Origin: Octopus bimaculoides
Lineage: Eukaryota
Length of the DNA stretch: 52,949 nt
Assembly (NCBI RefSeq): GCF_001194135.2
Contig: NC_068989.1
Span: 42,359,086-42,412,034 of the forward strand
Reading direction: 5' to 3'
Below, one piece after another: positions 385 to 52,949 of the stretch. The translations under genes were made by a program, and so were the position numbers. Below the pieces are notes generated by a model. The model saw nothing but the letters and a program-made list of their open reading frames with translations, did not search any database and was not told where the DNA came from. How positions within the stretch are numbered: position 1 is the stretch's first letter; the number at the start of each line of letters is the position of its first letter.

Positions 385-708
385 TAGTTTTATTTTTATA
401 ACGTGCTTTCACTTCACTACCGAACGCAGCTCTGTGCGCCTTGGGTATGTGCTGTGGTTTGCTGTGGTGCTCTTATGTTTACTGTATTGAAAGTGTTTTG
501 CGTAGGATGTGTGCAGTACCCAGTAGTGCAATTTTCTGTATGTTATATATATATTTGTAAGTCCTGCTATTTTTGTTATGTATTTGTCTGAATATTTTTT
601 TATTATACCTAAGGCACCTACTATGATAGGAATTGTTTCTGTTTTTAGATTCCACATTCGAGTTATCTCTATTTCCAGGTCTTTGTATTTTGAAAGTTTT
701 TCCATTTC

Positions 709-710
<2 letters not shown>
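382..710 (-). mobile_element. 5'-truncated R4/Dong-like non-LTR retrotransposon 3' end (restriction-like endonuclease C-terminus + 3' UTR), family A
   Basis: Translates KEMEKLSKYKDLEIEITRMWNLKTETIPIIVGALGIIKK..., then after a frameshift IALLGTAHILRKTLSI-like; typical RLE C-terminal motif; TAA tracts on both sides; near-identical copy at 42569-42882. Confidence 0.85.
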
Positions 711-742
<32 letters not shown>

Positions 743-845: not shown

Positions 846-1183
846 TGCACAGCTTCTAACGCTGGAGATGTACTACGGTGTCAGCTGTTCACCCCTTATT
901 TTTCGAGCACCTTCCGGAGTATTCGAGTGGTTCCAAGCAGTGCTGTTTTCTGCAAGTGCTCCACCCTTATTGCAGCCCCTATTTGTTCCATGTACAGCTC
1001 AAGATTTTTACTCACTATTCCCAGGGCTCCGCCAATTATTGTTAGTACTACCACCTTTTTCATCGACCACAACTGCTTAACCTCCCAAGCTAACCTGTCA
1101 TATCTATCGACTTTTCTTTCTTGCTTATCGCATACCTTGTTGTCGGCTGGGCAAGCTATATGTATGATTCAGCCATAGTTGAA
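846..1183 (-). mobile_element. R4-clade non-LTR retrotransposon 3' end (RLE domain), family B
   Basis: Minus strand reads IHIACPADNKVCDKQERKVDRYDRLAWEVKQLWSMKKVVVLTIIGGALGIVSKNLELYMEQIGAAIRVEHLQKTALLGTTRILRKVLEK* (stop at 896-898); homologous to but distinct from family A. Confidence 0.85.
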
Positions 1184-3400: not shown

Positions 3401-3678
3401 CAAGGGTTCCAGTTGATCTGATCAATGGAACAGCCTGTTGGGGAAATTAATATGTAAGTGGCTGAGTACTCCACAGGCACGCGTACCTTTGAATGTCGTT
3501 CTGAAGGAGATTCAGCGTGACAAAGTCGGCCGCTTTGAAATACAGGTACAACTAATTTTTTCCAGCTGAGTGGACCTAAGCAACATGAACAAGGGCACAA
3601 ACGCGCGGCCAGGGATCGAACTGACGACCATACGATCGTGAGCCGAATACCCCTAACTATCATGCCACGCGCCTTCAC
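3401..3678 (-). mobile_element. tRNA-derived SINE family D (CORE-like middle, shared long tail)
   Basis: Head gtgaaggcgcgtggcatgatagttagggg...; tail shared with 38357-38745 and 47846-48139. Confidence 0.8.
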
Positions 3679-4145
3679 TGGAACTGAAGTAGGAATATAG
3701 CCGCTAACATCTGTTCTGGTCGTGAAGAAGCTAGCAGTTTTATAAAACCAGATGTAGTATTCCTTACTTAAAATAATACTAATTTGAAGTAGTTGCTATT
3801 CCGGAGTCCCAATATTTGCCAATATTTACCAATGCTTATCGCCATCAGATTTATTTAGATAGATAAAGAAAGGAATTAAGCTAACGGCATTCAGTAATGC
3901 GTTTGACTTATTCATGTACTTCAGTGCAAAAATATGGTGTTTTCATTGTTCGTCGTAGGTGGAGAGTGACGTAAATGGAATTCAGTCATTAGTTACTGCA
4001 TATTTATTTCTTCTTCGATAAGTACAGAGATATACTCGTCGCAAGGATGTAAAACTATAATGACAGAACAAAGTATTTTATAAACCATCTCTCACGTTCA
4101 AAACAACGTTTTATATATTTTCTTTCTGTCTTTCTTTCTTTCTCG

Positions 4146-4809: not shown

Positions 4810-5600
4810 ACATACCCAGGCCTATTCCCCATTTTCTTTTCTTTTTTAGGAGTGGGTAGCTACAAGACACACCAGACGCACTCCATTCATTTCCCAGCTC
4901 AAAGAGGCGAGCCCCGTGCTATACTCAGGTCAAGGCATAGAACGCAACCTCTAATATCAGTAGCGGGGCCCGACAGCATATGCTGGTTTACTCCGCCACA
5001 TCATGCTGGTTTCATACCCCTTTGAGTAACATCAAATTCTCTCATCCATCCGCAAACACTCTCCAAGATTTCCTATCATTTATAAACTCTCTTGCCTCTC
5101 TCACTCCAACTTCTCTGACCACCAAAGCGTTCCTCATTCCATCCATCCACACAAACCGAGGTCTGCCTCTGGTTCTGTTGCCTACCAACTCTGCCTTCAT
5201 CGCTCTCCTTACCATCCGCTCCTCTTCTCTCCTCTCCATGTGGCCAAACTACCTCAACATTCGTCTATCCATTTTAGTTGTTAGTTTTTCTCTCATTCCT
5301 GCTCGCCTTCGCACCTTCTGTTCCTCATCCTGTCCATCCGTGTCAAACCAACCATAGCCCTCAGACGTCTCATCCATAAAGGCCCAATACACATCTCTCC
5401 CTTTTGTCAAAAACTTCTCACGCATCTGCCTTACTACAAATATCTGATCTGCACAGCCCCTTCCACTCCTAAAACCGCACTGCTCCTTCCCTATTACACT
5501 CTCTGTCTGGTTCCTCACCCTTACAACCAGAATTATCCCGTACAGTTTACCAACCACACACACAACAAACTTATACCCCTAAAATTGTTTATTTTCCTCA
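4810..5600 (-). mobile_element. RTE-clade LINE remnant, 5'-truncated with a large internal deletion
   Basis: NFRGISLLC(fs)VVGKLYG...KEQCGFRSGRGCADQIFVVRQMREKFLTKGRDVYWAFMD (RT N-terminal motifs) joined directly to MRRLRAMVGLTRMDRMRN...VRRRAGMREKL...FGHMERREEERMVRR...RTRGRPRFVWMDG (RTE C-terminus), then a 3' UTR ending in simple repeats. Confidence 0.9.
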
Positions 5601-9989: not shown

Positions 9990-10375
<386 letters not shown>

Positions 10376-10896
10376 CTGTGACAGCACATAGGTGGTATTA
10401 ATTTTCAGCTGACTAGGTTGGAGCAACGTGAAATGAAGCTTCTTACTCAAAGACAACGCGCTGTCTGTTTCAGTAAAGCGAACTCACGAACTTAACATGA
10501 AATAAACACCCCAACCTTTAGGCTGCATACGTTCACGCACACAGACACACACATACACACACACACACATACACACACACTCTCTCGAATACGCTTATAG
10601 TAAAGAAAACAGATGTATGTATAGTGAAAACCTCGAAAAGTATTAATTCCATAGACCTAATGTATAGGGAAACGGAAATGAATGTCAGCAAAACATAGCG
10701 ACTGCAATATTTATCGAACTGAAGCAATTATCCTGTCGAGCAAGTTGCCAAGACCAATGCAAATCTTCCACGCCGATCGAATGATGCAGGATGAGTAAGT
10801 TCATTTGCCCGAAATATTCTGCATCCATCATGCTGCATCCTTTGATTACAACGTACCCTGGCTCAGGCGGTTACGTGTTATTAAACCGATAGACAG

Positions 10897-11016
10897 GCCC
10901 CTGACTGGTGCAGCTACACCGAATCGGTGCAGACCTGGGAGAAATGGTGGCTAAGAAATGGTTTCAGACTCTTTAAAATCAACTATGGCACTCTCGAACG
11001 AGGGCCTCACTACCAG
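10897..11016 (+). other. candidate 120-bp phase 0-0 exon or decayed coding remnant
   Basis: cag|GCC...CAG|gtactg; open frame APDWCSYTESVQTWEKWWLRNGFRLFKINYGTLERGPHYQ; weak polypyrimidine tract; no partner exons found. Confidence 0.25.
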
Positions 11017-11221
11017 GTACTGTTTAAGGTTACACTAGGGACAGTAAGACATTTGTAAATAAAAAACAAACATAAGGAAACAAATAAAATAAAGCTGAAG
11101 GACAATGATTTAAGGACCAGTAGTGATAACTTCATTTGTGGAAGGGCGAGAAAGAATTATAAACAGCAAAGAGCGGAACCAAACAGCACTGATCAAACCA
11201 TGATATATTGCATCAATTAGA

Positions 11222-11476
11222 GCAGAAAGCTGGCAGAATCGTTAGTATGCCGGGCAAAATGCTTAGCGGCATTTCGCCCGTCTTTATGTTTTGAATTCAC
11301 ATTCCGCCGAGGGTGACTTTACTTTTCATCCTTTCGGGATCAATGTGATCGATTTTAACCTACCTCCACCTCGGAATTGCTGGTCGATAAAGTAAGTATC
11401 ATTTGAGTACTGGGACCGATGTAATCGATTTATTCCTTTCTTCGAACTTGCAGGCCTGGTTCTAAATTTTGAAACT
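11222..11476 (+). mobile_element. SINE family A (A2), diverged, with an internal partial tail duplication
   Basis: agctggcagaatcgttag..ccgggcaaaatgcttagcgg head; tttcatcctttcggg core; tail-like segment appears twice. Confidence 0.8.
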
Positions 11477-28633: not shown

Positions 28634-28697
<64 letters not shown>

Positions 28698-29094
28698 ATG
28701 TATGTATGTATTGTTATTATGTATGTATTGTGAGAAATAGAATAAATGAAATTAAAACTGCACAAGGAGTATATCAGAATTAATTAGAATTTAATATGTT
28801 AAAATATATGAATACACTTGACCGGTTTCACATTTGATTTTGAAAATTGTATACTGTATAGAGTTGTGTCACGAATTATGTCTATTCTGGCCGTTGTTAT
28901 GAAACAGTGTGTATATAAAGTAGGAATGTGGCTCAGAACACTATCCATTAACATACAAATTGATTGGTCAACAATTTATGCATTTACGCTCATGTGACAG
29001 TCCCGAAAGCAGATCACATTTATATTCAATGAATATGTTATATGACAGTTAGAAAAGAGAGATATGAATAAGTGATATAATAATTGTTTACAGT

Positions 29095-31560
29095 ACTTTC
29101 GTGTTGGTAAGTAGTTTTTTAGGGACTTCGGTTGCCTTTCGCATTTGATTATTTCTATATTTCATGTAAACTTTTCATTCTTGGGTCTTGGCTCAAAAGC
29201 AATATTTTCTGATTGGTAATGCTGAATGTTTCTATATTTCTTGGGTTGTGTGTTGTAATTAAAGATAGAGTTTTTGGTGTATCTAAGCAATTTTTGGCTT
29301 TGCTTAATTCTCCAATATTTCATATTGCTCTGGCGCGTTCCATTCTGTTCTCTATTAAAATAGACGGGTACATTCTTTCAAATAGTGCCAGCTTTAATTC
29401 AAGAAGCCTTTTATTCTGAACATCCAAATTGGAGACAATTGTTCTGATTCTTCCAGTTATGTTAAATGGAATATTGGATTTGATATGTTATGGGTGGTAT
29501 GAAGAAAACAGTAGGTACAAGTCCGTGGGCTTGTAGTAGATGTCGGTTTTTATGTTCGTGCCATTCTTAATAATTGAAATGTCTAAGAAGGACAGTTGGT
29601 TAAGAAGGGTTGTTGGCTAAATTCTATGGTGAACTGAATACTGTTATTGATACTATTGAGTAGGAATTTTAAATCGTTGAGTTCATCTAGGTTGTATGTC
29701 CACAGAATAAGGTAGTCATCTAAATATCGTTTCTAGTTTTTCACCAAATAATTTTCAAAGCTGATACCGTACTTTGCTTTTGGCTTGTTCATGCATTTGG
29801 ACTTCTAGATATGCTATGACTAAGTTGGCGTATACTGGGGCAACTTTTGTAATCATCGCAGATCCAGATATTTGTTGGTAGGTGCTTTTCTCGGAAATGA
29901 AGTTGTTTTGAAGGATGAATTTTAATTCCTCTGTAATTAATTATTGATCAATTCGATCTGGAATTTCGTCCTTAGTCAAAAACCTATTGTCTGAAGTCCG
30001 TACTCGTGTGGAATGGTAGTATAAATATTTACTATATCAAATGAAGTGATTATGGTATCCTGTTAGCTTTTTTCAGGGGGTAGTTTAATAGGTTTGGTCA
30101 CCCCTTATGAAACTTTGTATAAATTTTAAGAGACGGTTTAACAGTATGTCAACGAAGTTGCTAAGTCAGTGAGTTTCATAGACTGGGCCAGCTACAATCG
30201 GTCTTAATTTGAGATCCGTCAGGAAGAGTATGTTTATGTTGACTGAGTGTGATTCTTTACGGGACTCATTAATTATTTTATTTTTGTGGATTTTGGGAAG
30301 TACGAGGAGAAAGTGGTTTCGGCTATAAAATTTGTTAGATAGTCAATTTCTTCATTGGTTAAGCCTTTTCCGTGTTGGTTTATGAGAATGTTAAATTTAG
30401 ACATTGTCTTTGTTTGTTGATCGTTCTTTACTATCTTATAGTGGGTAGTGTCTTCAAGTAGAGTTTAAGCCGCATTTTTGTATTGTTCCATATTCATAAG
30501 TACAGCACTTGTTTTATAATTTTCTTTTATAGCTATGTTATTATTGCTTTTAGGTCATATATTGTTTTCCATTCTGTTCGACTAGTGTTGGACTTCCGTT
30601 TCGGAAAAGGGAGTTTAAGGGAAGGTGGATATAAACTCAGAAAATTTGTCTAGTGTCTTTTTCTTCTTTTTGTTGGGTTGTAACTGCTTCTGTTTTGCAC
30701 AATGGAATGATCAGTATCAAAAAGTTCTGTTAATCTTAATTTCCTACAAAAAAAATTTAGATATCATCTCGTACTTCCCTGAAGTTAAGATAATGTGCTG
30801 TCGGGGTAAATTTTAGACTTTTTGAAAGAATTTGTATTTGTTCTTTCGAGAGATTTAAGTCGGAAAGATTTATTTTAGGTTTCTTATCTTTATTCTGTAC
30901 TACCGGGCATCTTAAAATTATTCTTCTGGGCTTAAAAAAATGGCTTATGATGTTTGTTCTTTTGGTTGTGTTTCTAAGTTTGTGGTTATACACTCCGTTT
31001 CTTTCCAGTTTTCTGGAATAATTGTTGTCCTTTGTATGTCTGAATAAAGGCCATTGATGTCTATGATAGTTTCTCCTGTCATAATTACGGCTTCTTTGTG
31101 TATATTGAAATATTTGGTGGGTTTATTTTGTTGTCTAGAGAACCTGGAATCGGTGTTGTATCTTGCAAATCGTTGGTGGATAAAATTCTTAACTTTCGAT
31201 GTTTGTTGTGTGCGAATAAAACTGGCATGCTTTAATTTTTATACATACATACATATAATCATGTGTGCGTGTGTAAAATTAATTTAACTACTTTCAACTT
31301 CAATTGTTTGTCGTAATTTATTTATATAATAACTCCACCCTTTTCTTTGAAAGTTTGCCAACCTTTTAGGCGAGTCTTTTCTGTAGATAAAAGCTTCAGA
31401 TAATTAAGAGTATTTTTGAGTTTGGCTTTCAGTGTATCACTCCTTAAGCGAAGTAAGGCAAAGCGGTTACGAAAATTGCTTTGCAACCGCAAGGTACCGC
31501 ATTCGATACTAACACGAGGTATCCTGGGCAAATATAATTTTTTATTGTCTCAGCTCGACT
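29095..31560 (-). mobile_element. Penelope-like element, long decayed ORF (N-terminal region + RT + linker; endonuclease missing)
   Basis: INLSDLNLSKEQIQILSKSLKFTPT; LKLRPIVAGP; APVYANLV; KRYLDDYLILW (YLDD at 29715-29726); FLDI; TDIYYKPTD; HP.HIKSNIP; THNPRN; RQPKSLK. Many stops and frameshifts. Confidence 0.9.
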
Positions 31561-33775: not shown

Positions 33776-34620
33776 CTGTTCCAGGACCTTACTCTGGTCC
33801 TGGGGACAGTCTTTCTTGATATGACCGGGCTTCAGACACCGGTGGCACTTGGGTTTACGTCCCTCAAGAATTACCGGATATTTCTGGCCGGCCATCCTCA
33901 AAAACTCCGGAAATACCAGATCTCTGGCTGATTGGGTCCACAGGGTCAAAACCGCTTTTGCCCCAACCCAATCAGCTGTAGGTAAAATTTTCACATTTAA
34001 GAGCTTTGCTCCACTGCCACCCAGACGCCGTCGGATAGTATCCTCTATCCAATCAGGTTCTATACCGGGTGGCAGCCCACAGATCCAAGCCCTAGTTAAT
34101 TTCTTCCCACAGTATATGGGAAGAAACAGAATTTGATCCCGGTTCCGCTGCAGTCGTCACTTCGCTGGTGAAAACTAAATCCTTTGCGTAGTTCTACGTG
34201 GTGTAGTTCAAAGCAAGAGGAAGACTTTTCTTTAAATTTATTAGCTTTCAAAACGTGGTTTGATAACAATAAATTCCTTTTCTTTTTTAAACAAAGTTCA
34301 CAATATTAATTTGTAGTTCTCAATTCACGGCTTGAAAACAACAAACCTTTACAAACTAAGTTCACAATTTTTGGAGGAGTTATACCTCCAAAACACTCTT
34401 CTCACCGCTAAGTGAGACATTAAGCACAACCATAGGCAGACAAATGCGTGGAATTCAGTGGAGGTTTCTTGTTCGACATAAATATAAATAAATACGAGCA
34501 ACAAACCCCCACTAAATCCCCAAAAAACACAAAAGTCTTACCTGTAGTTGTACGTCAAAAATTCACGACGCTGGCATTCAGCGACGTGAAGCCGGAGCGA
34601 CAATAAACACGTCCTTTCGC
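33776..34620 (-). mobile_element. Tx1/L1-like LINE 5' region: probable 5' UTR and ORF1 with intact CCHC zinc knuckle
   Basis: Open frame DQILFLPIYCGKKLTRAWICGLPPGIEPDWI...PVILEGRKPKCHRCLKPGHIKKDC (Cx2Cx4Hx4C); G/T-rich upstream leader; runs into a 995-N gap. Confidence 0.8.
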
Positions 34621-35148
34621 TAAGCACGCTACTTACCATACAGACACTCCTGCGCCTATGATACTGTATATGAAAAGATTAGGAAAGATCATGGATAAAT
34701 TGCCATTGATTTGTAAGTAGTAGTAGTACTGCATATATATATACACATATACATACATACATACATACATACATACATACATACATACATACATACGTAC
34801 GTACGTACATATATNNNNNNNNNNNNNNNNNNNNNNNNNNNNNNNNNNNNNNNNNNNNNNNNNNNNNNNNNNNNNNNNNNNNNNNNNNNNNNNNNNNNNN
34901 NNNNNNNNNNNNNNNNNNNNNNNNNNNNNNNNNNNNNNNNNNNNNNNNNNNNNNNNNNNNNNNNNNNNNNNNNNNNNNNNNNNNNNNNNNNNNNNNNNNN
35001 NNNNNNNNNNNNNNNNNNNNNNNNNNNNNNNNNNNNNNNNNNNNNNNNNNNNNNNNNNNNNNNNNNNNNNNNNNNNNNNNNNNNNNNNNNNNNNNNNNNN
35101 NNNNNNNNNNNNNNNNNNNNNNNNNNNNNNNNNNNNNNNNTATATATA

Positions 35149-35618
35149 TAAACACAAGGACACAGGAAATGTGTCAAGGCCGACAGGAAGCAGTGCTGCT
35201 TCCTAGGGCTGAATAGCAGTATTGTTGTTCGCTTCATGGGACTGTCACATTAAGTTGACAGCATACAACTACTTTATCGTATCACTACTGCATAAATCTC
35301 TCTGAGAGATTTAGAAATGTATTATTGCTATTTTTGAAATCAGTGAATGTATTTCACTAGAATTATTATATGTTTACAAGAGCTTGGCAGGCATCTCCAA
35401 CAGCAGGCCATGCTACTCCAGACTGATGATGAGCAATGACTTTGAAACTAGTCTCTGGATGCAGGCTTAGCTGGGTGGGGGTGTTTGTCTCGCCCTTGTA
35501 AACATAAGGACACAGGAAATGTGTGAAGGCCGATAGGAAGCAGTGCTGCTTCCTGGGGCTGAATAGCAGTAGTGTTGTTCCCTTCATGGGGCTGTCACGT
35601 TAAGTTGACAGCATGCAA
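35149..35618 (+). mobile_element. retrozyme-like non-autonomous retroelement: 350-bp monomer + 120-bp terminal redundancy
   Basis: 35149-35268 and 35499-35618 are direct repeats (9 mismatches in 120 by manual count), period 350; no ORF of note; a hammerhead motif lies between them. Confidence 0.7.
35407..35466 (+). ncRNA. minimal type I hammerhead ribozyme motif
   Basis: Stem I tccaga (35417-22) with tctgga (35454-59), extendable via tgc/gca and gcc/ggc; CTGATGA (35423-29); short stem II; GAAA (35444-47); palindromic helix III ACTAGT; GUC cleavage triplet, predicted cut after 35453. Confidence 0.75.
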
Positions 35619-36262
35619 ACACACGCACACACACACACACACGCACATACCCATGCTTTCATACTTTCCGTACGGCTCACTCGACTCTTCATATTTCTTA
35701 TACTCTCTTTTATATGTACTAATACTTCCTAAACCATTCACGACTGCATGTTAAACAAGAGACCAAACAGCAGAATGTTTCTCTCGTTATCACTACTCAT
35801 TAATTTATCATAATTTATCAAGGTTCATTATATTACATGTTAATTATGGAACACGTTATCTCGGTAGTTAAATTACAGCAATTTCATCTATGTCTTTATT
35901 TTCATCTAAGCTGCTAAAGATATCATTTCGTAGAAATATTATCTCTATAATACTTAGGCTTAAGTGCCTTTAAGCTTATTTTGAAGGTTATCTTTCAGAT
36001 ATATCCAGATTTGCTTCTCTATGCAGTACATTTTGATGTCTCCATTTACAGATAAATATTCCGTCGATGAGTTACGCATCTTCTATTTTGATAGTATTCT
36101 TTCCCGACGGCTCTTCAATGCAGCATTTTCACATCCCACCATACCTGTTTATCATATCACTTTGACTGTTGTTTGCTTATAGCAATCTTTCATATGAGTC
36201 TGTGTGCGCGCGCGTGTACATGTCTTTCATTTGCTTATATACTTTTCATTTATATATATATA

Positions 36263-36293
<31 letters not shown>

Positions 36294-37672
36294 ATGTAGG
36301 TATGTGTGGTCGATGATATATATATATATATATATATATNNNNNNNNNNTATATATATATATATATATATCATCGACCACACATACTCTATGTATGTGTT
36401 TTTCTTGTTCGCCGGTACGCTGCGGTTTAGCGTGGTGAGAATGATTCTTTCAAAGCACTGGGTGCTAAGACATGTGAAAGTGATAGACAGGCAAGACATC
36501 TCGCCCCTAATCTCATTCGGGAGCGATGGATATCGATATTTCGCCATTTTTGTGGTTTATTAACATGATGTAGACGAATCGAACCGAAGAAGAACTGAAT
36601 CACCAGTCGATGACTACATACAAATAGTGTAAAAAAAAAAAAAGAAGACATTTACTGATATGCCACAACGATATATACATACGATTAAATTCAATTGTGG
36701 ATTAGAAGCAGCCTGAAGGAGCTCGGTAAGTCGCATAGAGCGGAATCAAACAGTTTTAAATAAGAATAGCAACAACAACAACAACAACAACAATAGATTC
36801 TGTCGGTGTCGCTGTTCATGTGGAGGATGCTAGTGGTGGTCAGTGTCTTTCTAGTTTATGCATGTGTGTGTCGGTTGTTTGAGAAAGGCATTTAATAAAA
36901 AAGATCTGACTCAAGGAAATTTCTTTCGATGAGATATTAACCAAATATTGGTGATGTTGTGTCTTTATATCTGTGGGAACCAGATCCTAAAAGCAAAACA
37001 AGAGAAAAAAAAAAGGCCCATATTTTTTAAAAGATATTCATCTAAGATAATTTCACGGGCGGAAAATCATTTTCTTTCCAGTTCATTTGATTGTCAGCCT
37101 GAAATTTTGAGGAAGTGGGATAGTCGATTGCATTGACCATAGTGCTCAAGTACTGTCATTATCAATTCATAGCAGAGAAACATACCTACACATATACACA
37201 TATGCATACCTACAAACAAACAAACATACATATATACATACATACATACATACATACATACATACATGCATACATACATACATACATACATGCATGCATA
37301 CATTCATACAAAAATACCTTTCTTGTATTGAAATTCCATTGAAGGAGCCTTGGACTAGGTTACAAACCGGATCTTTCTCTATTAGCAAGAAATTTTGCAA
37401 TAAAGCTGAATAATGACATACATACATACATACATACATACATAGTCTGGATAAGTTTGGATTTTCAGAAAATGTGATCAACCAAATGATTCGCACACTG
37501 GAAATACAATCTGTAAGCGGAACAATAAAACTATGCAAAACTTTTCTCAGGTTTAAAATGTGACATTGTTTTCGTTATCTGAATTTCAACGATGGAGTTT
37601 TGTATATTTGTTAGAAACAAGCTCCTTCTTCAGAGGAAGAATTTAAATGATTAAATTCAGAAGAGACATACA

Positions 37673-38311: not shown

Positions 38312-38356
38312 ACATTGACGGACTGATGTACATTCATACAAGCGATAAGTTTATAT

Positions 38357-38745
38357 GTTGTTGTTGTTGGCACTCCGTCGCTTATGACGTCGAGGGTTCC
38401 AGTTGATCCGATCAACGGAACAGCCTGCTCGTGAAATTAACGTGCAAGTGGCTGAGCACTCCACAGACACGTGTACCCTTAACGTAGTTCTCGGGGATAT
38501 TCAGCGTGACACAGTGTGACAAGGCTGACCCTTTGAATTACAGGCACAACAGAAACAGGAAGTAAGAGTGAGAGAAAGTTGTGGTGAAAGAGTACAGCAG
38601 GGTTCGCCACCATCCCCTGCCGGAGCCTCGTGGAGCTTTAGGTGTTTTCGCTCAATAAACACTCACAACGCCCGGTCTGGGAATCGAAACCGCGATCCTA
38701 TGACCGCGAGTCCGCTGCCCTAACCACTGGGCCATTGCGCCTCCA
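38357..38745 (-). mobile_element. young full-length tRNA-derived SINE family C with (CAA)n tail and 14-bp TSD
   Basis: A-box tggcccagtgg, B-box ggtttcgattccc; TSD cgataagtttatat at 38343-38356 and 38746-38759. Confidence 0.95.
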
Positions 38746-42568: not shown

Positions 42569-42882
42569 AAACTTTCAAATACAAAGACCTGGAAATAGAG
42601 GTAACTCGAATGTGGAATCTAAAAACAGAAACAATTCCTATCATAGTGGGTGCCTTAGGTATAATAAAAAATATTCAGACAAATACATAACAAAAACACC
42701 AGGACTTACAAATATATATAACATACAGAAAATTGCACTACTGGGCACTGCACACATCCTACGCAAAACACTTTCAATACAGTAACCATAAGAGCATCAC
42801 AGCAAACCACAGCACATACCCAAGCCTCACAGAGCTGCGCTCGGTAGTGAAGTGAAAGCACGTTATAAATATAAAACTACTG
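42569..42882 (+). mobile_element. R4/Dong-like RLE 3' end, family A, second copy
   Basis: KYKDLEIEVTRMWNLKTETIPIIVGALGIIK(fs)YSDKYITKTPGLTNIYNIQKIALLGTAHILRKTLSIQ*; (TAA)n tail at 42883-42903; 5' side lost in a gap. Confidence 0.9.
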
Positions 42883-47845: not shown

Positions 47846-48139
47846 TAGCACTCTGTCGGTTACGAAGACGAGCGTTCGAGTTGATCCGATCAACGGAAGA
47901 GCCTGCTCGCGAAATTAACGTGCAAGTGGCTGAGCGCTCCACAAACACGTCTACATTTAATGTAGTCCTCAGCGTAACACAGTGTGCGACAAGGAGGTAC
48001 TACTAATTTTTGCCAGCTGTGTGGAATGGGGCAACATGAAATAACGTGTCTTGCTCAAAGACACAACGTGTCGCCGGGAATTGAACTCACGACCTTACAA
48101 TAGTGATCCGAATACACTAACCACTAAGCCACGTGCCTC
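47846..48139 (-). mobile_element. SINE family D, full-length
   Basis: Head gaggcacgtggcttagtggttagtgtattcgg, gtgagttcaattcccgg, tgtgtctttgagcaagacac CORE-like middle, shared tail. Confidence 0.9.
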
Positions 48140-50907: not shown

Positions 50908-52075
50908 GCTGTGTTGGAGTGGTTTTTGTGCTTGGTTGGATTGCGTTGTTGTGTCGGGGAGGAGTTGTTAAAGTTTGTTTGTTTTTGTTGAACTATTTTT
51001 TTGAATTGTTTGTAAAGCAATTATCGTTTTCCCCCGCGCAGGGAAGCCTTCGTTATGGTTTGTGTTGAGAAGCCAGGAGAAGAGGTGCATGAGTGAGGAG
51101 GAGGTGGAAAAATTAGTCGAAAAACAACTTAGTGATTCCGACGATGAATACCCGAGATTGAGAGAGAGAATAATGCCATCTATAACGAGAAGAATTACTG
51201 AAACACCTAGTATACTAACGAAAGAAAAGGCAGAAGAAAAGAAAGAAAAGAATAAGAAGCTTGACTTCGCCGCTGTTACAGGAGCCAAATTAAAAAAATA
51301 AATCTCAATAATGTACAAATAATGTCAAGGGAGAAGCACGAAATTAACGTGGCCCCTACAAAAAGTATTATTGAAGATCTAGAAAAGAAAACGCTGATAT
51401 ACAAGACTACAAGGTGAAGGAAAAAAGAATCGACTATGTAACAGAAGCAGAAATCAAAAAATGAATAAAGCCAATATGGCATAAGCGAGAAGGAGGAGAT
51501 ATGGTGCAATGGAGGTCAGAATGGAGTTGGAAGAGGAATGTCGGATCCATTCTGTAGACCCCTTTAAAACGGACGAAGTAGTTCTTATACCCATATACGT
51601 GGGTAGAAGAACGTCCAGAATTACAGTAAACAACATTCCCTCTGAAGTGAACCCTGAGTGGCTTATCACGGCTGAAACTATGGGTCTCGAAGAAAAAAGA
51701 ACCGTGTTACATGCCGAAGTGATGGAGCCACGAAACTGGCACGGCCAATGTATAAGAATAATCATACAAGCAGAACAGACCACACTGGAAGAAATCATCG
51801 AAATCTTCGAGGTTGGTGAGACCCGACTGGCGGTGACGGTAGAGGGTCACCAACCTCGATGCTTCCAGCGTGGTAAAAAAAAGGCCACCTCAGGGTGGAC
51901 TGTAAAACCAAGGAAACAAAGAAAAAGAAGGAAGAAACCGAGAACGAACAAGTAGTGATTGAACCTGTATCGCAGAAACAACGAACACCAATGCCAGAAA
52001 AAGGAGAGGGGTGGTCTATTGTTCAGAACTAGAGGAAAATAAAGCCACCCTTCCCCGAAAAAGAAAAGATAAAGC
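50908..52075 (+). mobile_element. Tx1/L1-like LINE 5' UTR + decayed ORF1
   Basis: G/T-rich leader; MSEEEVEKL... from 51089 with frameshifts; DEVVLIPIYVGRRTSRITVNNIPSEVNPEWL...VTVEGHQPRCFQRGKK(fs)GHLRVDC is a decayed CCHC knuckle; homologous to 33776-34150. Confidence 0.8.
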
Positions 52076-52914
52076 GGAGACACGTTTAGCCTATGTATTG
52101 CTCTCGACACCCAGAGCAAATTAATACATATAATAGGTTTTCCGAAGCACATGTGAAGTTGTTTTTCACTGTAAAACGTTGACCCTGTTTGAAAGAGAAC
52201 TCCGATCCCTCAGGTTGACGCATATACCACAGTTAGGTCTTCTGCATTTTTTTACTGACGGCTTCAGTGTTGTTGTCTAGCGAACTCGGGCTGGTGTTAG
52301 GAGACTTTTCATGGATTTGGGTTGTCTTTTGCTCTTCATGATGGTGTGCGTTTGGAGGGTTAAATTCATTCTGTGGTCCCTTTTTAGTAGGGGAATGTTC
52401 TGGAGGATGGTGTCGAAGGCTTCATTGTTAAGAAGGTTGTGTGTGGAGATGTATGGCAGGGCAAGTTGAAAGCCTAATTCGATTAGTGATGGTGGGTAGT
52501 TCCTGGCAATGGGTGTATCCTTTTAATTCATGTAGTCGTGTGTCCCTAGTGCTTGCATTAGAAACTACAGTACAAATCTTTTGCTAGGCTGAAAGAGATA
52601 TTCATTCTAGTGTGTCTGGGGTGGCATGAGTTGAACGGTAGTTATTACTTAGAGTCCGTGGGCTTATAGTATATATTTGTTTCTATTTCGTTGTTAGATT
52701 TCTTAATGAGGATGTCGAGGAATGGAAGTTGTTGATGGTTATATTCCATCGTAAATTGAATGTTTACGTCAAGTCCATTTATAAATGCTTGAAATTCTTT
52801 AAGTCTCTCTATACTTTGCCAAAAAATGAAACGTTCATCCAGATACCTCTTCCAGTTATTTTCTATGTAGAGAGAGAATGGGTTGCCATATTTTTCTAGT
52901 ATCTTACGATAAAG

Positions 52915-52917
<3 letters not shown>
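52076..52917 (-). mobile_element. Penelope-like element remnant: RT C-half, linker and GIY-YIG N-half
   Basis: WKRYLDERFIFW; QLPFLDI; IYYKPTD; HPRH; SKRQPKSMKSLL; PSVKKCRRPNCGICVNL(fs)GSEFSFKQGQRFTVKNNFTCASENLLYVLICSGCREQYIG*T. Confidence 0.9.

Positions 52918-52949
<32 letters not shown>

What the first reader, a model, noticed from the sequence alone, without database searches (positions are those of the whole stretch)
35149..35618. Retrozyme-like element: hammerhead ribozyme inside a 350-bp unit present 1.34 times
Seen: a 120-bp direct repeat (about 92% identical, period 350) brackets a non-coding unit containing tccaga-CTGATGA-tgagcaatgacttt-GAAA-CTAG-TC-tctgga. All conserved hammerhead core nucleotides are present, stem I pairs perfectly for 6 bp, and helix III is the palindrome ACTAGT. 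Known: minimal type I hammerheads with palindromic helix III occur in Penelope-like elements and in metazoan non-LTR retrozymes (roughly 170-400-nt tandem monomers, related to newt satellite 2 and Schistosoma SM-alpha), which self-cleave, often as dimers, and give circular RNAs. Inference: monomer plus partial redundancy is what reverse transcription running more than once round a circular RNA would leave, so this may be a cephalopod retrozyme family. I do not know whether it has been described. The base before GAAA is T rather than C, plausibly CpG decay, so this copy may be weakened.
Basis: partly seen in the sequence, partly recalled or inferred. Interest (0 to 1): 0.88.

Follow-up and report, generated by a model that had tools for sequence, protein, structure and literature searches.

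The report
Hammerhead retrozyme copy in octopus DNA
This stretch of octopus DNA is one old, probably inactive copy of a small non-coding "jumping" element carrying a genuine self-cutting hammerhead RNA motif; the kind is known from mussels, corals and salamanders, and I found no paper in the searchable library reporting it from cephalopods.

Summary
A 120-nt direct repeat (92.5% identical, period 350) bounds a 470-bp non-coding insert at 35149-35618, which lies between (TA)n and (CA)n microsatellites. The hammerhead is real. Rfam misses it, but Rfam also misses canonical controls of the same class. A covariance model built only from five published retrozyme hammerheads finds 35414-35460 full-length at 35.3 bits (E about 3e-9); the next hit in the window scores 10.9 bits. 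It has the canonical metazoan type-I layout, but helix II is weak (U.U, G.U, A-U, G-C). An Argonauta hians locus holds a 356-nt tandem array (4.9 copies, 99% identical, inside (TA)n) next to a Penelope-like element, with a hammerhead-like motif in every monomer. Its monomer aligns collinearly with the window unit (p about 0.003). Both inserts end at nearly the same monomer position (165 and 170 nt after the cut) but start at different ones. That pattern indicates target-primed reverse transcription from a fixed RNA site, giving a truncated copy followed by a full unit. Not shown: other copies in Octopus, circular RNA, or cleavage. Verdict: a decayed solo copy of a non-LTR retrozyme, a new member of a known kind.

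The parts
35149..35618 (+). Whole insert: 1.34 units of a 350-nt non-coding element
   Evidence: Direct-repeat family D2, period 350; blastn self-hits. The edges of repeat homology coincide with the flanking microsatellites.
35149..35268 (+). Upstream 5'-truncated copy: the last 120 nt of the unit, equal to monomer positions 46-165 counted from the ribozyme cut
   Evidence: 92.5% identical to 35499-35618. Read as the truncated leading copy because the 3' end is shared with the Argonauta array while the 5' ends differ.
35269..35618 (+). One full-length 350-nt unit. It begins CTACTTTATCGTATC and ends GACAGCATGCAA.
   Evidence: The start block CTAC(TT)TATCGT is conserved with the Argonauta monomer just after that array's 3' end. 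GC is 42.3%. RNA fold z = -4.9 to -5.1, or -7.6 when permuted to start at the cut, against a window background of -0.6 +/- 1.4.
35414..35460 (+). Type-I hammerhead ribozyme motif, including the loop-1 bulge UAC/U
   Evidence: Model R1: 35.3 bits, E 3.3e-9, model positions 1-47 without gaps; descriptor hit.
35417..35422 (+). Helix I, 5' strand (UCCAGA)
   Evidence: Pairs with 35454-35459 in 6 Watson-Crick pairs. Helix I covaries across relatives.
35423..35429 (+). Catalytic core C3-A9 (CUGAUGA)
   Evidence: Read directly; invariant columns in the training alignment.
35430..35443 (+). Helix II (U.U, G.U, A-U, G-C) and loop 2 (CAAUGA); weak
   Evidence: Read directly. The explicit hammerhead fold is +0.8 kcal/mol, against -4.8 for a canonical control. 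Loop 2 has the form CAAxxA, as in Sm1/N79 (CAAAUA) and axolotl Ax330 (CAAAAA).
35444..35453 (+). GAAA, palindromic loop 3 (CUAG), U16.1 and C17. The predicted cut is between 35453 and 35454.
   Evidence: Read directly. Same architecture as axolotl Ax330 (GAAA-CAUG-UC) and the Argonauta PLE hammerheads (GAAA-CUAG-U).
35454..35459 (+). Helix I, 3' strand (UCUGGA)
35377..35498 (+). Imperfect hairpin of about 120 nt that extends helix I and carries the hammerhead at its tip
   Evidence: MFE and centroid structures; inverted repeat I21.
35141..35148 (.). Left flank: end of a (TA)n tract. It follows a 326-N assembly gap (34815-35140) and a (CATA)n/(CGTA)n tract (34732-34814).
35619..35647 (.). Right flank: (CA)n microsatellite directly abutting the 3' end of the insert

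Best explanation
The insert at 35149-35618 is a solo genomic copy of a small (350-nt), non-coding, non-autonomous retroelement of the metazoan non-LTR retrozyme kind, in an octopus genome. Each unit encodes a canonical type-I hammerhead on the + strand. In an active source locus, which would be a tandem array like the one found in Argonauta, the multimeric transcript would be cut after C17. Two neighbouring ribozymes would probably act as a dimer by pairing their palindromic ACUAGU into an extended helix III. Monomers could then be ligated into circles. A reverse transcriptase, most likely from a Penelope-like element (PLE), then starts cDNA synthesis at a defined internal site of the multimeric or circular RNA, about 165-170 nt downstream of the cut. 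Synthesis is primed on a nicked microsatellite target, runs for more than one unit and stops at a variable point. The product is a 5'-truncated copy followed by a full unit, inserted between (TA)n and (CA)n. This particular copy has only one ribozyme and a sub-canonical helix II, and its two repeat copies have diverged by 7.5%. It is therefore most likely an inactive relic about 10 million years old. Shown here: the repeat, the hammerhead identity, the RNA structure signal, the flanks, the presence of PLEs, and the Argonauta relative. Inferred: transcription, cleavage, circularisation, PLE dependence and the priming site.
For: The repeat and its period are established. Model R1, built from coral, mussel, two axolotl and Schistosoma-derived hammerheads, gives 35.3 bits and E 3.3e-9 at 35414-35460, with the next hit at 10.9 bits; this score is in the range of canonical controls (31-37 bits). 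Features not required by any search also match published type-I ribozymes: the UAC/U loop 1, the CAAxxA hexaloop, the U.U at 10.1/11.1, and the 1-bp helix III with a palindromic tetraloop. The chance expectation is 0.08 per genome. The monomer RNA is unusually structured, more so on the + strand (-121 against -98.6 kcal/mol; z -4.9 against -3.5). GC is 42%. There is no coding signal and there are no protein relatives. PLE reverse-transcriptase remnants lie in the window, with best hits to Octopus proteins, and PLEs make up 6.8% of the O. vulgaris genome. PLEs insert as partial tandems into (TA)n or (CA)n (PMC8557442) and start reverse transcription internally (PMC11167929). Argonauta locus L009 has a 356-nt array of 4.9 copies at 99% identity inside (TA)n, with a hammerhead-like motif in each monomer, adjacent to a PLE whose own hammerheads share the U.U and CUAG features. 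The two monomer bodies are both 307 nt and align collinearly; 3 of 1000 shuffles and 0 of 89 rotations reach the observed score. The 3' ends fall at monomer positions 165 and 170, while the 5' ends fall at 46 and 222.
Against: No second copy of the unit was found in Octopus sequence: none in the window and none in about 43 kb of O. bimaculoides and O. sinensis loci. No eukaryotic genome database was available, so a family within Octopus is unproven. Helix II is weak and the hammerhead fold is not the minimum-energy fold. The Argonauta ribozyme scores only 13.4 bits (E 0.11) and has a helix II of 2-3 bp. Homology to the Argonauta monomer is statistically modest (p about 0.003-0.01), and blastn sees nothing outside the ribozyme. 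The shared 3' end rests on two insertions only (about 3% by chance). The octopus PLE copies that I sampled show no hammerhead. No expression, cleavage or circle data could be obtained.
Confidence: 0.74

Rival explanations
1. The insert is a fragment of an autonomous Penelope-like element: either a pLTR pair or a heavily 5'-truncated PLE tandem, with the coding part lost or hidden in the adjacent assembly gap.
For: PLE pLTRs carry hammerheads and form partial tandems. The Argonauta PLE hammerheads share N7=U, the U.U pair and the CUAG loop with the window motif. Retrozymes are close relatives of pLTRs in Xenopus. A gap lies 8 nt to the left of the insert.
Against: The redundancy has a 350-nt period with no ORF between the repeats. 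A PLE pLTR pair would be separated by at least 2.5 kb of coding sequence. The gap is estimated at 326 nt and is separated from the unit by (TA)n. The unit has no similarity to the PLE remnants in the window or to the sampled octopus PLE loci. The Argonauta relative is a pure 356-nt array.
Confidence: 0.07
2. The insert is a local tandem duplication or a remnant of a satellite array that arose by slippage or unequal crossing-over. It carries a fossil hammerhead, and no retrotransposition produced this copy.
For: Only 1.34 units are present. An assembly gap lies next to the element, and assemblers collapse tandem arrays. Newt and Schistosoma hammerhead repeats were first described as satellites.
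Against: Both ends of the repeat homology coincide exactly with different microsatellites, (TA)n and (CA)n. That is expected for an inserted unit and not for duplication of resident sequence. The 3' end matches that of the Argonauta array in monomer coordinates. There is no further copy nearby.
Confidence: 0.1
3. The insert is a SINE-like element mobilised by a LINE rather than a PLE, comparable to Schistosoma Sm-alpha. On this view the (CA)n is the element's own 3' tail and the hammerhead is a passenger.
For: The (CA)n tract directly follows the 3' end. Several LINE reverse-transcriptase remnants lie in the window. Octopus genomes are rich in SINEs.
Against: No tRNA-like head was found. A partial head-to-tail tandem is typical of PLE-mobilised elements and not of SINEs. 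The Argonauta array ends in (TA)n, not (CA)n, so the microsatellite behaves as target rather than tail.
Confidence: 0.06
4. The hammerhead-like motif is a chance match inside an unrelated structured repeat.
For: A relaxed descriptor is expected to hit more than 100 times by chance in a Gb-sized genome. Rfam reports nothing. Helix II is poor.
Against: The Rfam negative is uninformative, because Rfam also misses canonical controls of the same class. R1 gives 35.3 bits against a 10.9-bit runner-up, and scaling its E-value to a whole genome gives about 2e-4. The loop 1 and loop 2 signatures, which no search asked for, match published ribozymes. With all observed features required, the expectation is 0.08 per genome.
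Confidence: 0.03

Closest known systems
Metazoan non-LTR retrozymes (Cervera & de la Pena 2020, PMC7229834), especially the axolotl 330- and 350-nt repeats (HHR_Amex1 and HHR_Amex2) and the mussel Mg353 repeat
   Same: The unit is about 350 nt, non-coding and below 45% GC, with one type-I hammerhead per unit and head-to-tail redundancy. Helix III is 1 bp with a palindromic tetraloop, as in Amex1 (CAUG there, CUAG here). Helix II has a U.U at its base, as in Amex2. Loop 2 has the form CAAxxA. The monomer RNA is strongly structured.
   Different: Only 1.34 units with a single ribozyme are seen here. No family, circular RNA or cleavage has been shown. Helix II has 3 pairs, one of them a wobble. 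There is no sequence similarity outside the ribozyme.
The 356-nt tandem array in Argonauta hians found here (L009 13786-15515, GCA_054771915.1)
   Same: The host is an octopod. The monomer bodies are both 307 nt without the ribozyme, and blocks are collinear (GCTGGGG..GCCCTTGT, CTAC..TATCGT, ATCAGTGRATGTATTCACT). The hammerhead sits at the same place in the monomer. Both lie in (TA)n flanks, both 3' ends fall at monomer position about 165-170, and both RNAs are highly structured (z -4.5).
   Different: The Argonauta array has 4.9 copies at 99% identity and so is young. Its helix III is a 10-nt palindrome (UCAGCGCUGA), its 10.1/11.1 position is A.A, and its helix II is GC/GC only. Overall identity is about 59%, so the two are at best distant relatives. 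I did not find this array described in the papers searched.
Penelope-like element pLTR hammerheads (Cervera & de la Pena 2014, PMC4209133; Frangieh et al. 2024, PMC11167929)
   Same: Shared features are a palindromic minimal helix III, expected action as a dimer, partial-tandem insertion, a preference for microsatellite or AT-rich targets, and internal initiation of reverse transcription. The Argonauta PLE hammerheads share CUGAUGA-U...U-GAAA-CUAG-U with the window motif.
   Different: There is no RT or GIY-YIG coding region. PLE minimal hammerheads typically have a long helix II (6-8 bp) and a short helix I (4-5 bp). Here helix I is 6 bp and has the canonical loop 1 and loop 2 signatures.
Schistosoma Sm-alpha (Sm1 hammerhead; its N79 derivative is printed in PMC12550524) and newt satellite 2
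   Same: These are repeats of about 330 nt with a type-I hammerhead. Sm1/N79 shares the UAC bulge next to a 6-bp helix I, the single U opposite it, a 4-position helix II and a 6-nt loop 2 that begins CAA.
   Different: Sm1 has a strong G-C-rich helix II and is an efficient ribozyme. Sm-alpha is described as SINE-like. The comparison with newt satellite 2 rests on my own knowledge and on descriptions in the literature, not on a sequence test made here.

Membership tests
Type-I hammerhead ribozyme | Conserved core CUGANGA ... GAAA ... UH with an A15.1-U16.1 pair and H17 not G | tested here: met
   All core positions are present, with C17 at 35453. R1 aligns full-length without gaps.
Type-I hammerhead ribozyme | Three helices in type-I topology: helix I open, helices II and III closed | tested here: met
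   Helix I has 6 Watson-Crick pairs. Helix III is 1 bp plus the palindromic CUAG. Helix II is present but weak: 3 pairs plus a U.U.
Type-I hammerhead ribozyme | Match to a curated or independent covariance model | tested here: met
   Rfam gives no hit, but it also misses canonical controls of this class. The independent model R1 gives 35.3 bits, E 3.3e-9.
Type-I hammerhead ribozyme | Self-cleavage after H17 | not testable with these tools
   This needs in vitro transcription of monomer and dimer constructs. Energetics suggest this copy is weak.
Metazoan non-LTR retrozyme | Short (about 170-400 nt) non-coding unit in head-to-tail arrangement, with one hammerhead per unit | tested here: met
   The period is 350 nt and 1.34 units are present, with one hammerhead in the full unit. 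ORFs are at most 77 aa and have no true relatives. Solo or monomer copies are reported as common in Xenopus.
Metazoan non-LTR retrozyme | Low GC (below 45%) and a highly structured monomer RNA | tested here: met
   GC is 42.3%. The fold z-score is -4.9 to -7.6, against a window background of -0.6 +/- 1.4.
Metazoan non-LTR retrozyme | Multi-copy family dispersed or in tandem in the host genome | not testable with these tools
   No eukaryotic genome collection was available. There are no copies in the window or in 43 kb of Octopus loci. A distant relative forms an array in Argonauta.
Metazoan non-LTR retrozyme | Expression as small circular RNAs joined at the ribozyme cut | not testable with these tools
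   No RNA-seq data were accessible. No translated trace of the unit exists in the assembly-derived protein libraries, which is only a weak negative.
Metazoan non-LTR retrozyme | Co-occurrence with Penelope-like elements in the host | tested here: met
   PLE reverse-transcriptase remnants lie at about 28800-31122(-) and 52236-52947(-). PLEs are 6.8% of the O. vulgaris genome. The Argonauta array abuts a PLE.
PLE pseudo-LTR | The repeats flank an RT plus GIY-YIG open reading frame | tested here: not met
   Only 230 nt of non-coding sequence lie between the repeat copies.
tRNA-derived SINE (Sm-alpha-like) | A tRNA-related head with pol III A and B boxes | tested here: not met
   ARAGORN finds nothing in the window, and I saw no A/B-box spacing by eye. 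Degenerate promoters cannot be excluded.

The most novel reading that the evidence does not exclude
Octopods may carry a lineage of 350-356-nt retrozymes that predates the split between Octopus and Argonauta and is still amplifying in Argonauta, where the array is 99% identical. Their hammerheads would be a distinct sub-type with a non-Watson-Crick 10.1/11.1 pair (U.U or A.A) and a helix II of only 2-4 bp. Copying into DNA would always begin at one internal RNA site about 165-170 nt after the ribozyme cut. That would make the lineage a natural system for studying PLE-type internal initiation on multimeric or circular templates, and a possible source of abundant ribozyme-derived circular RNAs in cephalopod tissues.
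Probability: 0.3. Interest if true: 0.6.

Novelty: new member of a known kind. Interest (0 to 1): 0.42.

Why it matters
Retrozymes have been described from cnidarians, bivalves, amphibians and other animals. None of the papers I could search mentions hammerheads or retrozymes in cephalopods, although octopus genomes are about 7% Penelope-like elements and their transposon and RNA biology is closely studied. If the family is confirmed, repeat annotations of octopus genomes gain a named class that is currently likely to be filed under unknown repeats or tandem repeats. The shared 3' end seen in the Octopus and Argonauta copies would give a testable link between retrozymes and the internal-initiation mechanism recently shown for a PLE. 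There is also a practical lesson: Rfam's hammerhead models miss this whole class of ribozyme (1-bp helix III with a palindromic loop), so Rfam-based annotation will under-report it.

Tried and rejected
- **Rfam.** I ran it at gathering score and at E<=10. It returned only microsatellite-driven miRNA noise. Controls showed the hammerhead negative means nothing.
- **C/D-box snoRNA reading.** The weak SNORD109A hit (16 bits) is rejected: there is no D box and the match is only 35 nt long.
- **Protein handle.** The 73/77-aa minus-strand frame of the unit gave nothing in the word-indexed search. The exhaustive phmmer search gave only spurious hits to frames that read through unrelated satellites.
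- **Metagenome pattern scan.** It found a true hammerhead family with 727-1020-nt units. That family shares only the 41-nt ribozyme with the window, so it is not the same element, and the helix I and helix III identity was imposed by my pattern.
- **Sampling octopus DNA through TE proteins.** The abundant TE ORF led to ENA contigs of another species, at about 75% identity. Two Octopus loci (43 kb) contain no copy of the unit.
- **Looking up a window ORF** to find the locus in other assemblies: not on record.
- **Plain MAFFT alignment of the hammerheads** misaligned loop 3 and loop 2. I fixed this by trimming loop 3 and adding N placeholders, both declared in the report.
- **RNAcofold of two copies** did not reproduce the double-hammerhead. 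Nearest-neighbour energy models do not capture the ribozyme core, so this is uninformative.
- **Free-end global alignment with the Argonauta monomer** was uninformative. I replaced it with fixed-end alignment and with shuffle and rotation controls.
- **Literature searches for the sequence strings** found nothing relevant.
Full report
**1. The observation.** A 120-nt direct repeat lies at 35149-35268 and 35499-35618. It has 9 mismatches (92.5% identity; 6 transitions, 3 transversions) and a period of 350 nt, so the insert is 470 nt, or 1.34 units. The left edge of repeat homology sits directly on a (TA)n tract. That tract follows a 326-N assembly gap and a (CATA)n/(CGTA)n tract. The right edge sits directly on a (CA)n tract. 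The unit occurs nowhere else in the 52.9-kb window. The hammerhead-like string lies at 35417-35459 and reads exactly as written.

**2. Is the hammerhead more than chance?**

- **Descriptor.** A type-I descriptor finds only this site in the window. Four hundred random windows gave 2 hits under the relaxed rule (helix I of at least 5 bp) and none with a helix I of 6 bp or more.
- **Analytic expectation.** A loose motif would occur more than 100 times by chance in a 2.7-Gb genome. With the features actually seen (six Watson-Crick pairs in helix I, and a palindromic tetraloop as helix III) the expectation falls to 1.5e-6 per window and 0.08 per genome.
- **Rfam.** It reports no hammerhead at gathering score or at E<=10. 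This negative carries no weight. Rfam also fails to report canonical hammerheads of the same architecture that I recovered from metagenome contigs, even in a 561-nt search at E<=10.
- **Independent model.** I built a covariance model, R1, from five published ribozymes that owe nothing to this window. They are coral Amil224, mussel Mg353 and axolotl Ax330 and Ax353 (Supplementary Table 2 of PMC7229834), plus the Schistosoma-derived N79 (PMC12550524). Two simplifications are declared: loop 3 was trimmed to its first two and last two bases, and an N was placed in the three 5-nt loop-2 sequences to keep the helices in register. The named structure holds on the training set, with 98% of cells paired and 7 of 12 pairs showing compensatory change.
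- **Result.** With filters off, R1 finds 35414-35460 full-length and gapless at 35.3 bits, E 3.3e-9. The runner-up in the window scores 10.9 bits. Canonical controls score 31-37 bits. The model's calibration is rough, but the 24-bit margin does not depend on it.

**3. Anatomy of the ribozyme.** Several features that no search asked for match published type-I ribozymes:

- a UAC bulge immediately 5' of a 6-bp helix I, with a single U opposite it, as in Sm1/N79;
- a four-position helix II closed by a six-base loop of the form CAAxxA (CAAUGA here, CAAAUA in N79, CAAAAA in axolotl Ax330);
- a helix III that is a single A-U pair capped by a palindromic tetraloop (CUAG here, CAUG in Ax330);
- a U.U at the base of helix II, which is the described hallmark of axolotl HHR_Amex2, visible in Ax353 as CUGAUGA-U-GCC...GGC-U-GAAA.

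Helix II is nonetheless weak: U.U, G.U, A-U, G-C, then a C.A mismatch. The explicit hammerhead fold costs +0.8 kcal/mol, against -4.8 for a canonical control. By comparison with the Argonauta ribozyme (GC-AAAU-GC), I infer that a G-to-A change at 35439 cost this copy one pair. That is inference, not a tested result. With a 1-bp helix III, cleavage would need two ribozymes pairing through ACUAGU, as established for newt and PLE hammerheads (PMC4209133). This locus has only one ribozyme.

**4. The unit as an RNA.** The 350-nt monomer folds far better than shuffled sequence: -121 kcal/mol with z about -5, and z = -7.6 when permuted to start at the cut. The minus strand gives -98.6 kcal/mol and z = -3.5. 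Random 350-nt segments of the same window give z = -0.6 +/- 1.4, and only 1 of 45 is more extreme than the unit. About 66% of bases are paired, 13 of 116 pairs are G.U, and the hammerhead sits at the tip of a hairpin of about 120 nt that extends helix I. GC is 42.3%. There is no coding signal. The only long frame (77 aa, minus strand) has no relatives in either protein library, and the few hits are frames through unrelated satellites.

**5. Genomic context.** The window is octopus-like. It shares a 390-bp repeat at 95.6% identity with an O. bimaculoides chromosome, and the best protein hits for its transposon remnants are Octopus proteins. It contains decayed Penelope-like reverse-transcriptase remnants at about 28800-31122(-) and 52236-52947(-). 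Pfam does not recognise them. PLEs are reported to make up 6.8% of the O. vulgaris genome. They insert as partial tandems, prefer (TA)n or (CA)n targets (PMC8557442), and start reverse transcription at an internal site of their RNA (PMC11167929). In Xenopus, retrozymes are close relatives of PLE pLTRs, and solo monomers are common (bioRxiv 10.64898/2026.07.22.740005).

**6. Relatives.** No eukaryotic genome collection was available, so I could not search Octopus genomes directly.

- **Metagenome family.** A metagenome scan with the core pattern found a hammerhead element family with 727-1020-nt units. It shares only the 41-nt ribozyme with the window.
- **Argonauta array.** Fetching cephalopod loci through PLE proteins gave the key result. 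An Argonauta hians locus (L009) holds a 356-nt tandem array of 4.9 copies at 99% identity, embedded in (TA)n. Every monomer carries CCGGCA-CUGAUGA-AGCAAAUGCA-GAAA-UCAGCGCUGA-UC|UGUCGG on the minus strand. The array lies next to a PLE that is itself flanked by an inverted pair of hammerheads. The monomer RNA is also highly structured, z = -4.5.
- **Caveats on that array.** Its ribozyme scores only 13.4 bits with R1 and has a very short helix II. Calling it a retrozyme rests on the combination of features rather than on the model score.
- **Homology with the window unit.** blastn sees no similarity between the two monomers. With the ribozyme removed, however, both bodies are exactly 307 nt. A fixed-end global alignment scores 108, against 75.7 +/- 11.4 for dinucleotide shuffles (3 of 1000 reach it) and 67 +/- 14 for circular rotations (0 of 89 reach it). 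The collinear blocks are GCTGGGG..GCCCTTGT, CTAC..TATCGT and ATCAGTGRATGTATTCACT. I read this as distant homology with modest support.
- **Pair conservation.** Across the window, metagenome and Argonauta hammerheads, helix I is paired in 100% of cells and all six positions show compensatory changes. That alignment was fitted to the model and so leans towards the structure.

**7. Mechanism.** Counted from the ribozyme cut, the window insert ends at monomer position 165 and the Argonauta array ends at position 170. Their 5' ends lie at 46 and 222. A shared 3' end with variable 5' truncation is the signature of target-primed reverse transcription that starts at a defined site on the RNA. With only two insertions, chance coincidence is about 3%. 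On this reading the window structure is a 5'-truncated copy (35149-35268) followed by a full unit (35269-35618), which is the PLE-style partial tandem. The template must have had a 350-nt periodicity, so it was either a multimeric transcript or a circle, and the data do not distinguish the two. Both junctions show short microhomology with the flanks: UAAA against (TA)n, and ACAA against (CA)n (by eye). Divergence between the two copies of the repeated segment is a JC distance of 0.079. Using the calibration in PMC13282606 (0.09 corresponds to 25 My), the insertion would be about 10 My old if the two copies were identical when inserted.

**8. Verdict.** The element is best explained as a decayed solo copy of a non-LTR retrozyme in an octopus (confidence 0.74). 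The rivals are less likely for the reasons given in their entries: a PLE pLTR fragment, a local duplication or satellite remnant, a LINE-dependent SINE, and a chance motif. This is a new member of a known kind. In the searchable library I found no paper that reports hammerheads or retrozymes in cephalopods, which shows absence from that library only. Interest is moderate. The copy itself is ordinary. The possible octopod-wide lineage, its unusual helix II, and the fixed priming site are worth a genome-wide follow-up.

Noticed in passing
L009 13786-15515 (Argonauta hians, GCA_054771915.1, BAAFZT010000002.1): A 356-nt tandem array of 4.9 copies at 99% identity, embedded in (TA)n, with a type-I hammerhead-like motif in every monomer on the minus strand. 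It looks like a young retrozyme array in an octopod.
   Followed up: yes
L009 8407-8452(-) and 13614-13659(+): An inverted pair of hammerheads (UCU-CUGAUGA-U-ACAAA-ACAA-UUUGU-U-GAAA-CUAG-UU-AGA) flanks the PLE gene at 10001-11227. So hammerhead-bearing PLEs exist in octopods, and their U.U and CUAG features match the window motif.
   Followed up: partly
L009 18907-18950(-): A solitary hammerhead-like motif (TCTCTAC-CUGAGGA-UUUUUAAUAAA-GAAA-CGCG-UU|GUAGAGA) scoring 22.5 bits with R1, near microsatellites.
   Followed up: no
window 28800-31122 (-): A decayed Penelope-like reverse-transcriptase remnant with motifs LPKIHK, LRPIVAG, YQQISGSAM, RYLDDYLILW and LSFLDISIIK..IYYKPTD, broken by many stops and frameshifts. 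It ends at a (GATA)n/(CAGA)n microsatellite near 28640-28720. Pfam does not recognise it; the best protein hit is O. bimaculoides LOC106870299.
   Followed up: partly
window 52236-52947 (-): A second PLE reverse-transcriptase fragment (..LPFLDILIKK..IYYKPTDSK) that runs off the end of the window.
   Followed up: no
window 412-741(-), 899-1168(-), 42570-42782(+); also 5045-5578(-): Three copies of a transposon ORF tail (..GALG..LQKTALLGTTRILRKVLE) and LINE-type reverse-transcriptase fragments. Relatives at about 70-75% identity occur on long ENA contigs (ERZ25066843, ERZ25066847, ERZ25042219) from an unidentified species.
   Followed up: partly
window 33776-34156(-) and 51485-51952(+): Gag-like ORFs. 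The first has a CCHC zinc knuckle (Pfam zf-CCHC, E 1e-4) and is cut by an assembly gap about 1 kb upstream of the retrozyme copy. I saw no link to the unit.
   Followed up: no
window 36300-36336 / 36350-36386: A perfect 37-nt inverted repeat around a 10-N gap within (AT)n. It may be an assembly artefact at a palindromic join, or a real hairpin.
   Followed up: no
window 38356-38745 (also 47848-47970): A repeat that is 95.6% identical to O. bimaculoides chromosome CM046609.1 (L004 19389-19772). This is the best evidence for the window's origin.
   Followed up: partly
L001, L002, L003 (metagenome contigs Ga0314680_10104106, OBQE01000158.1, OQVM01076114): A family of elements with 727-1020-nt units carrying a canonical type-I hammerhead (GCCAGA-CUGAUGA-GACC..GGUC-GAAA-CUAG-UC|UCUGGU). 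L001 and L002 are assembled as more than one unit. L003 is a 5'-truncated insertion in a GT-rich microsatellite. The host organism is unknown.
   Followed up: partly
L005 350-600 (O. sinensis CM016859.1): A nearly perfect palindromic element of about 240 bp sits between (TA/CA)n microsatellites. Its centre (GAAGCUUC-CUGAUGA-UUUC..GAAU-GAAAC..) gives R1 hits on both strands (19.7 and 14.5 bits). It could be a head-to-head hammerhead relic or a chance match.
   Followed up: no
L007 3407-3448(-) and 3977-4018(+) (ENA ERZ25066847): An inverted pair of PLE-type minimal hammerheads (CCAAA-CUGAAGA-..-GAAA-CGCG-UA-UUUGG; 22.8 bits) flanks a small ORF at 3519-3848 that resembles the end of a GIY-YIG endonuclease.
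   Followed up: no
Rfam release 15 (method note): Rfam's hammerhead models report neither the window motif nor canonical type-I hammerheads with a 1-bp helix III and a palindromic tetraloop, even at E<=10 in about 560 nt. Rfam-based annotation will miss this class.
   Followed up: yes
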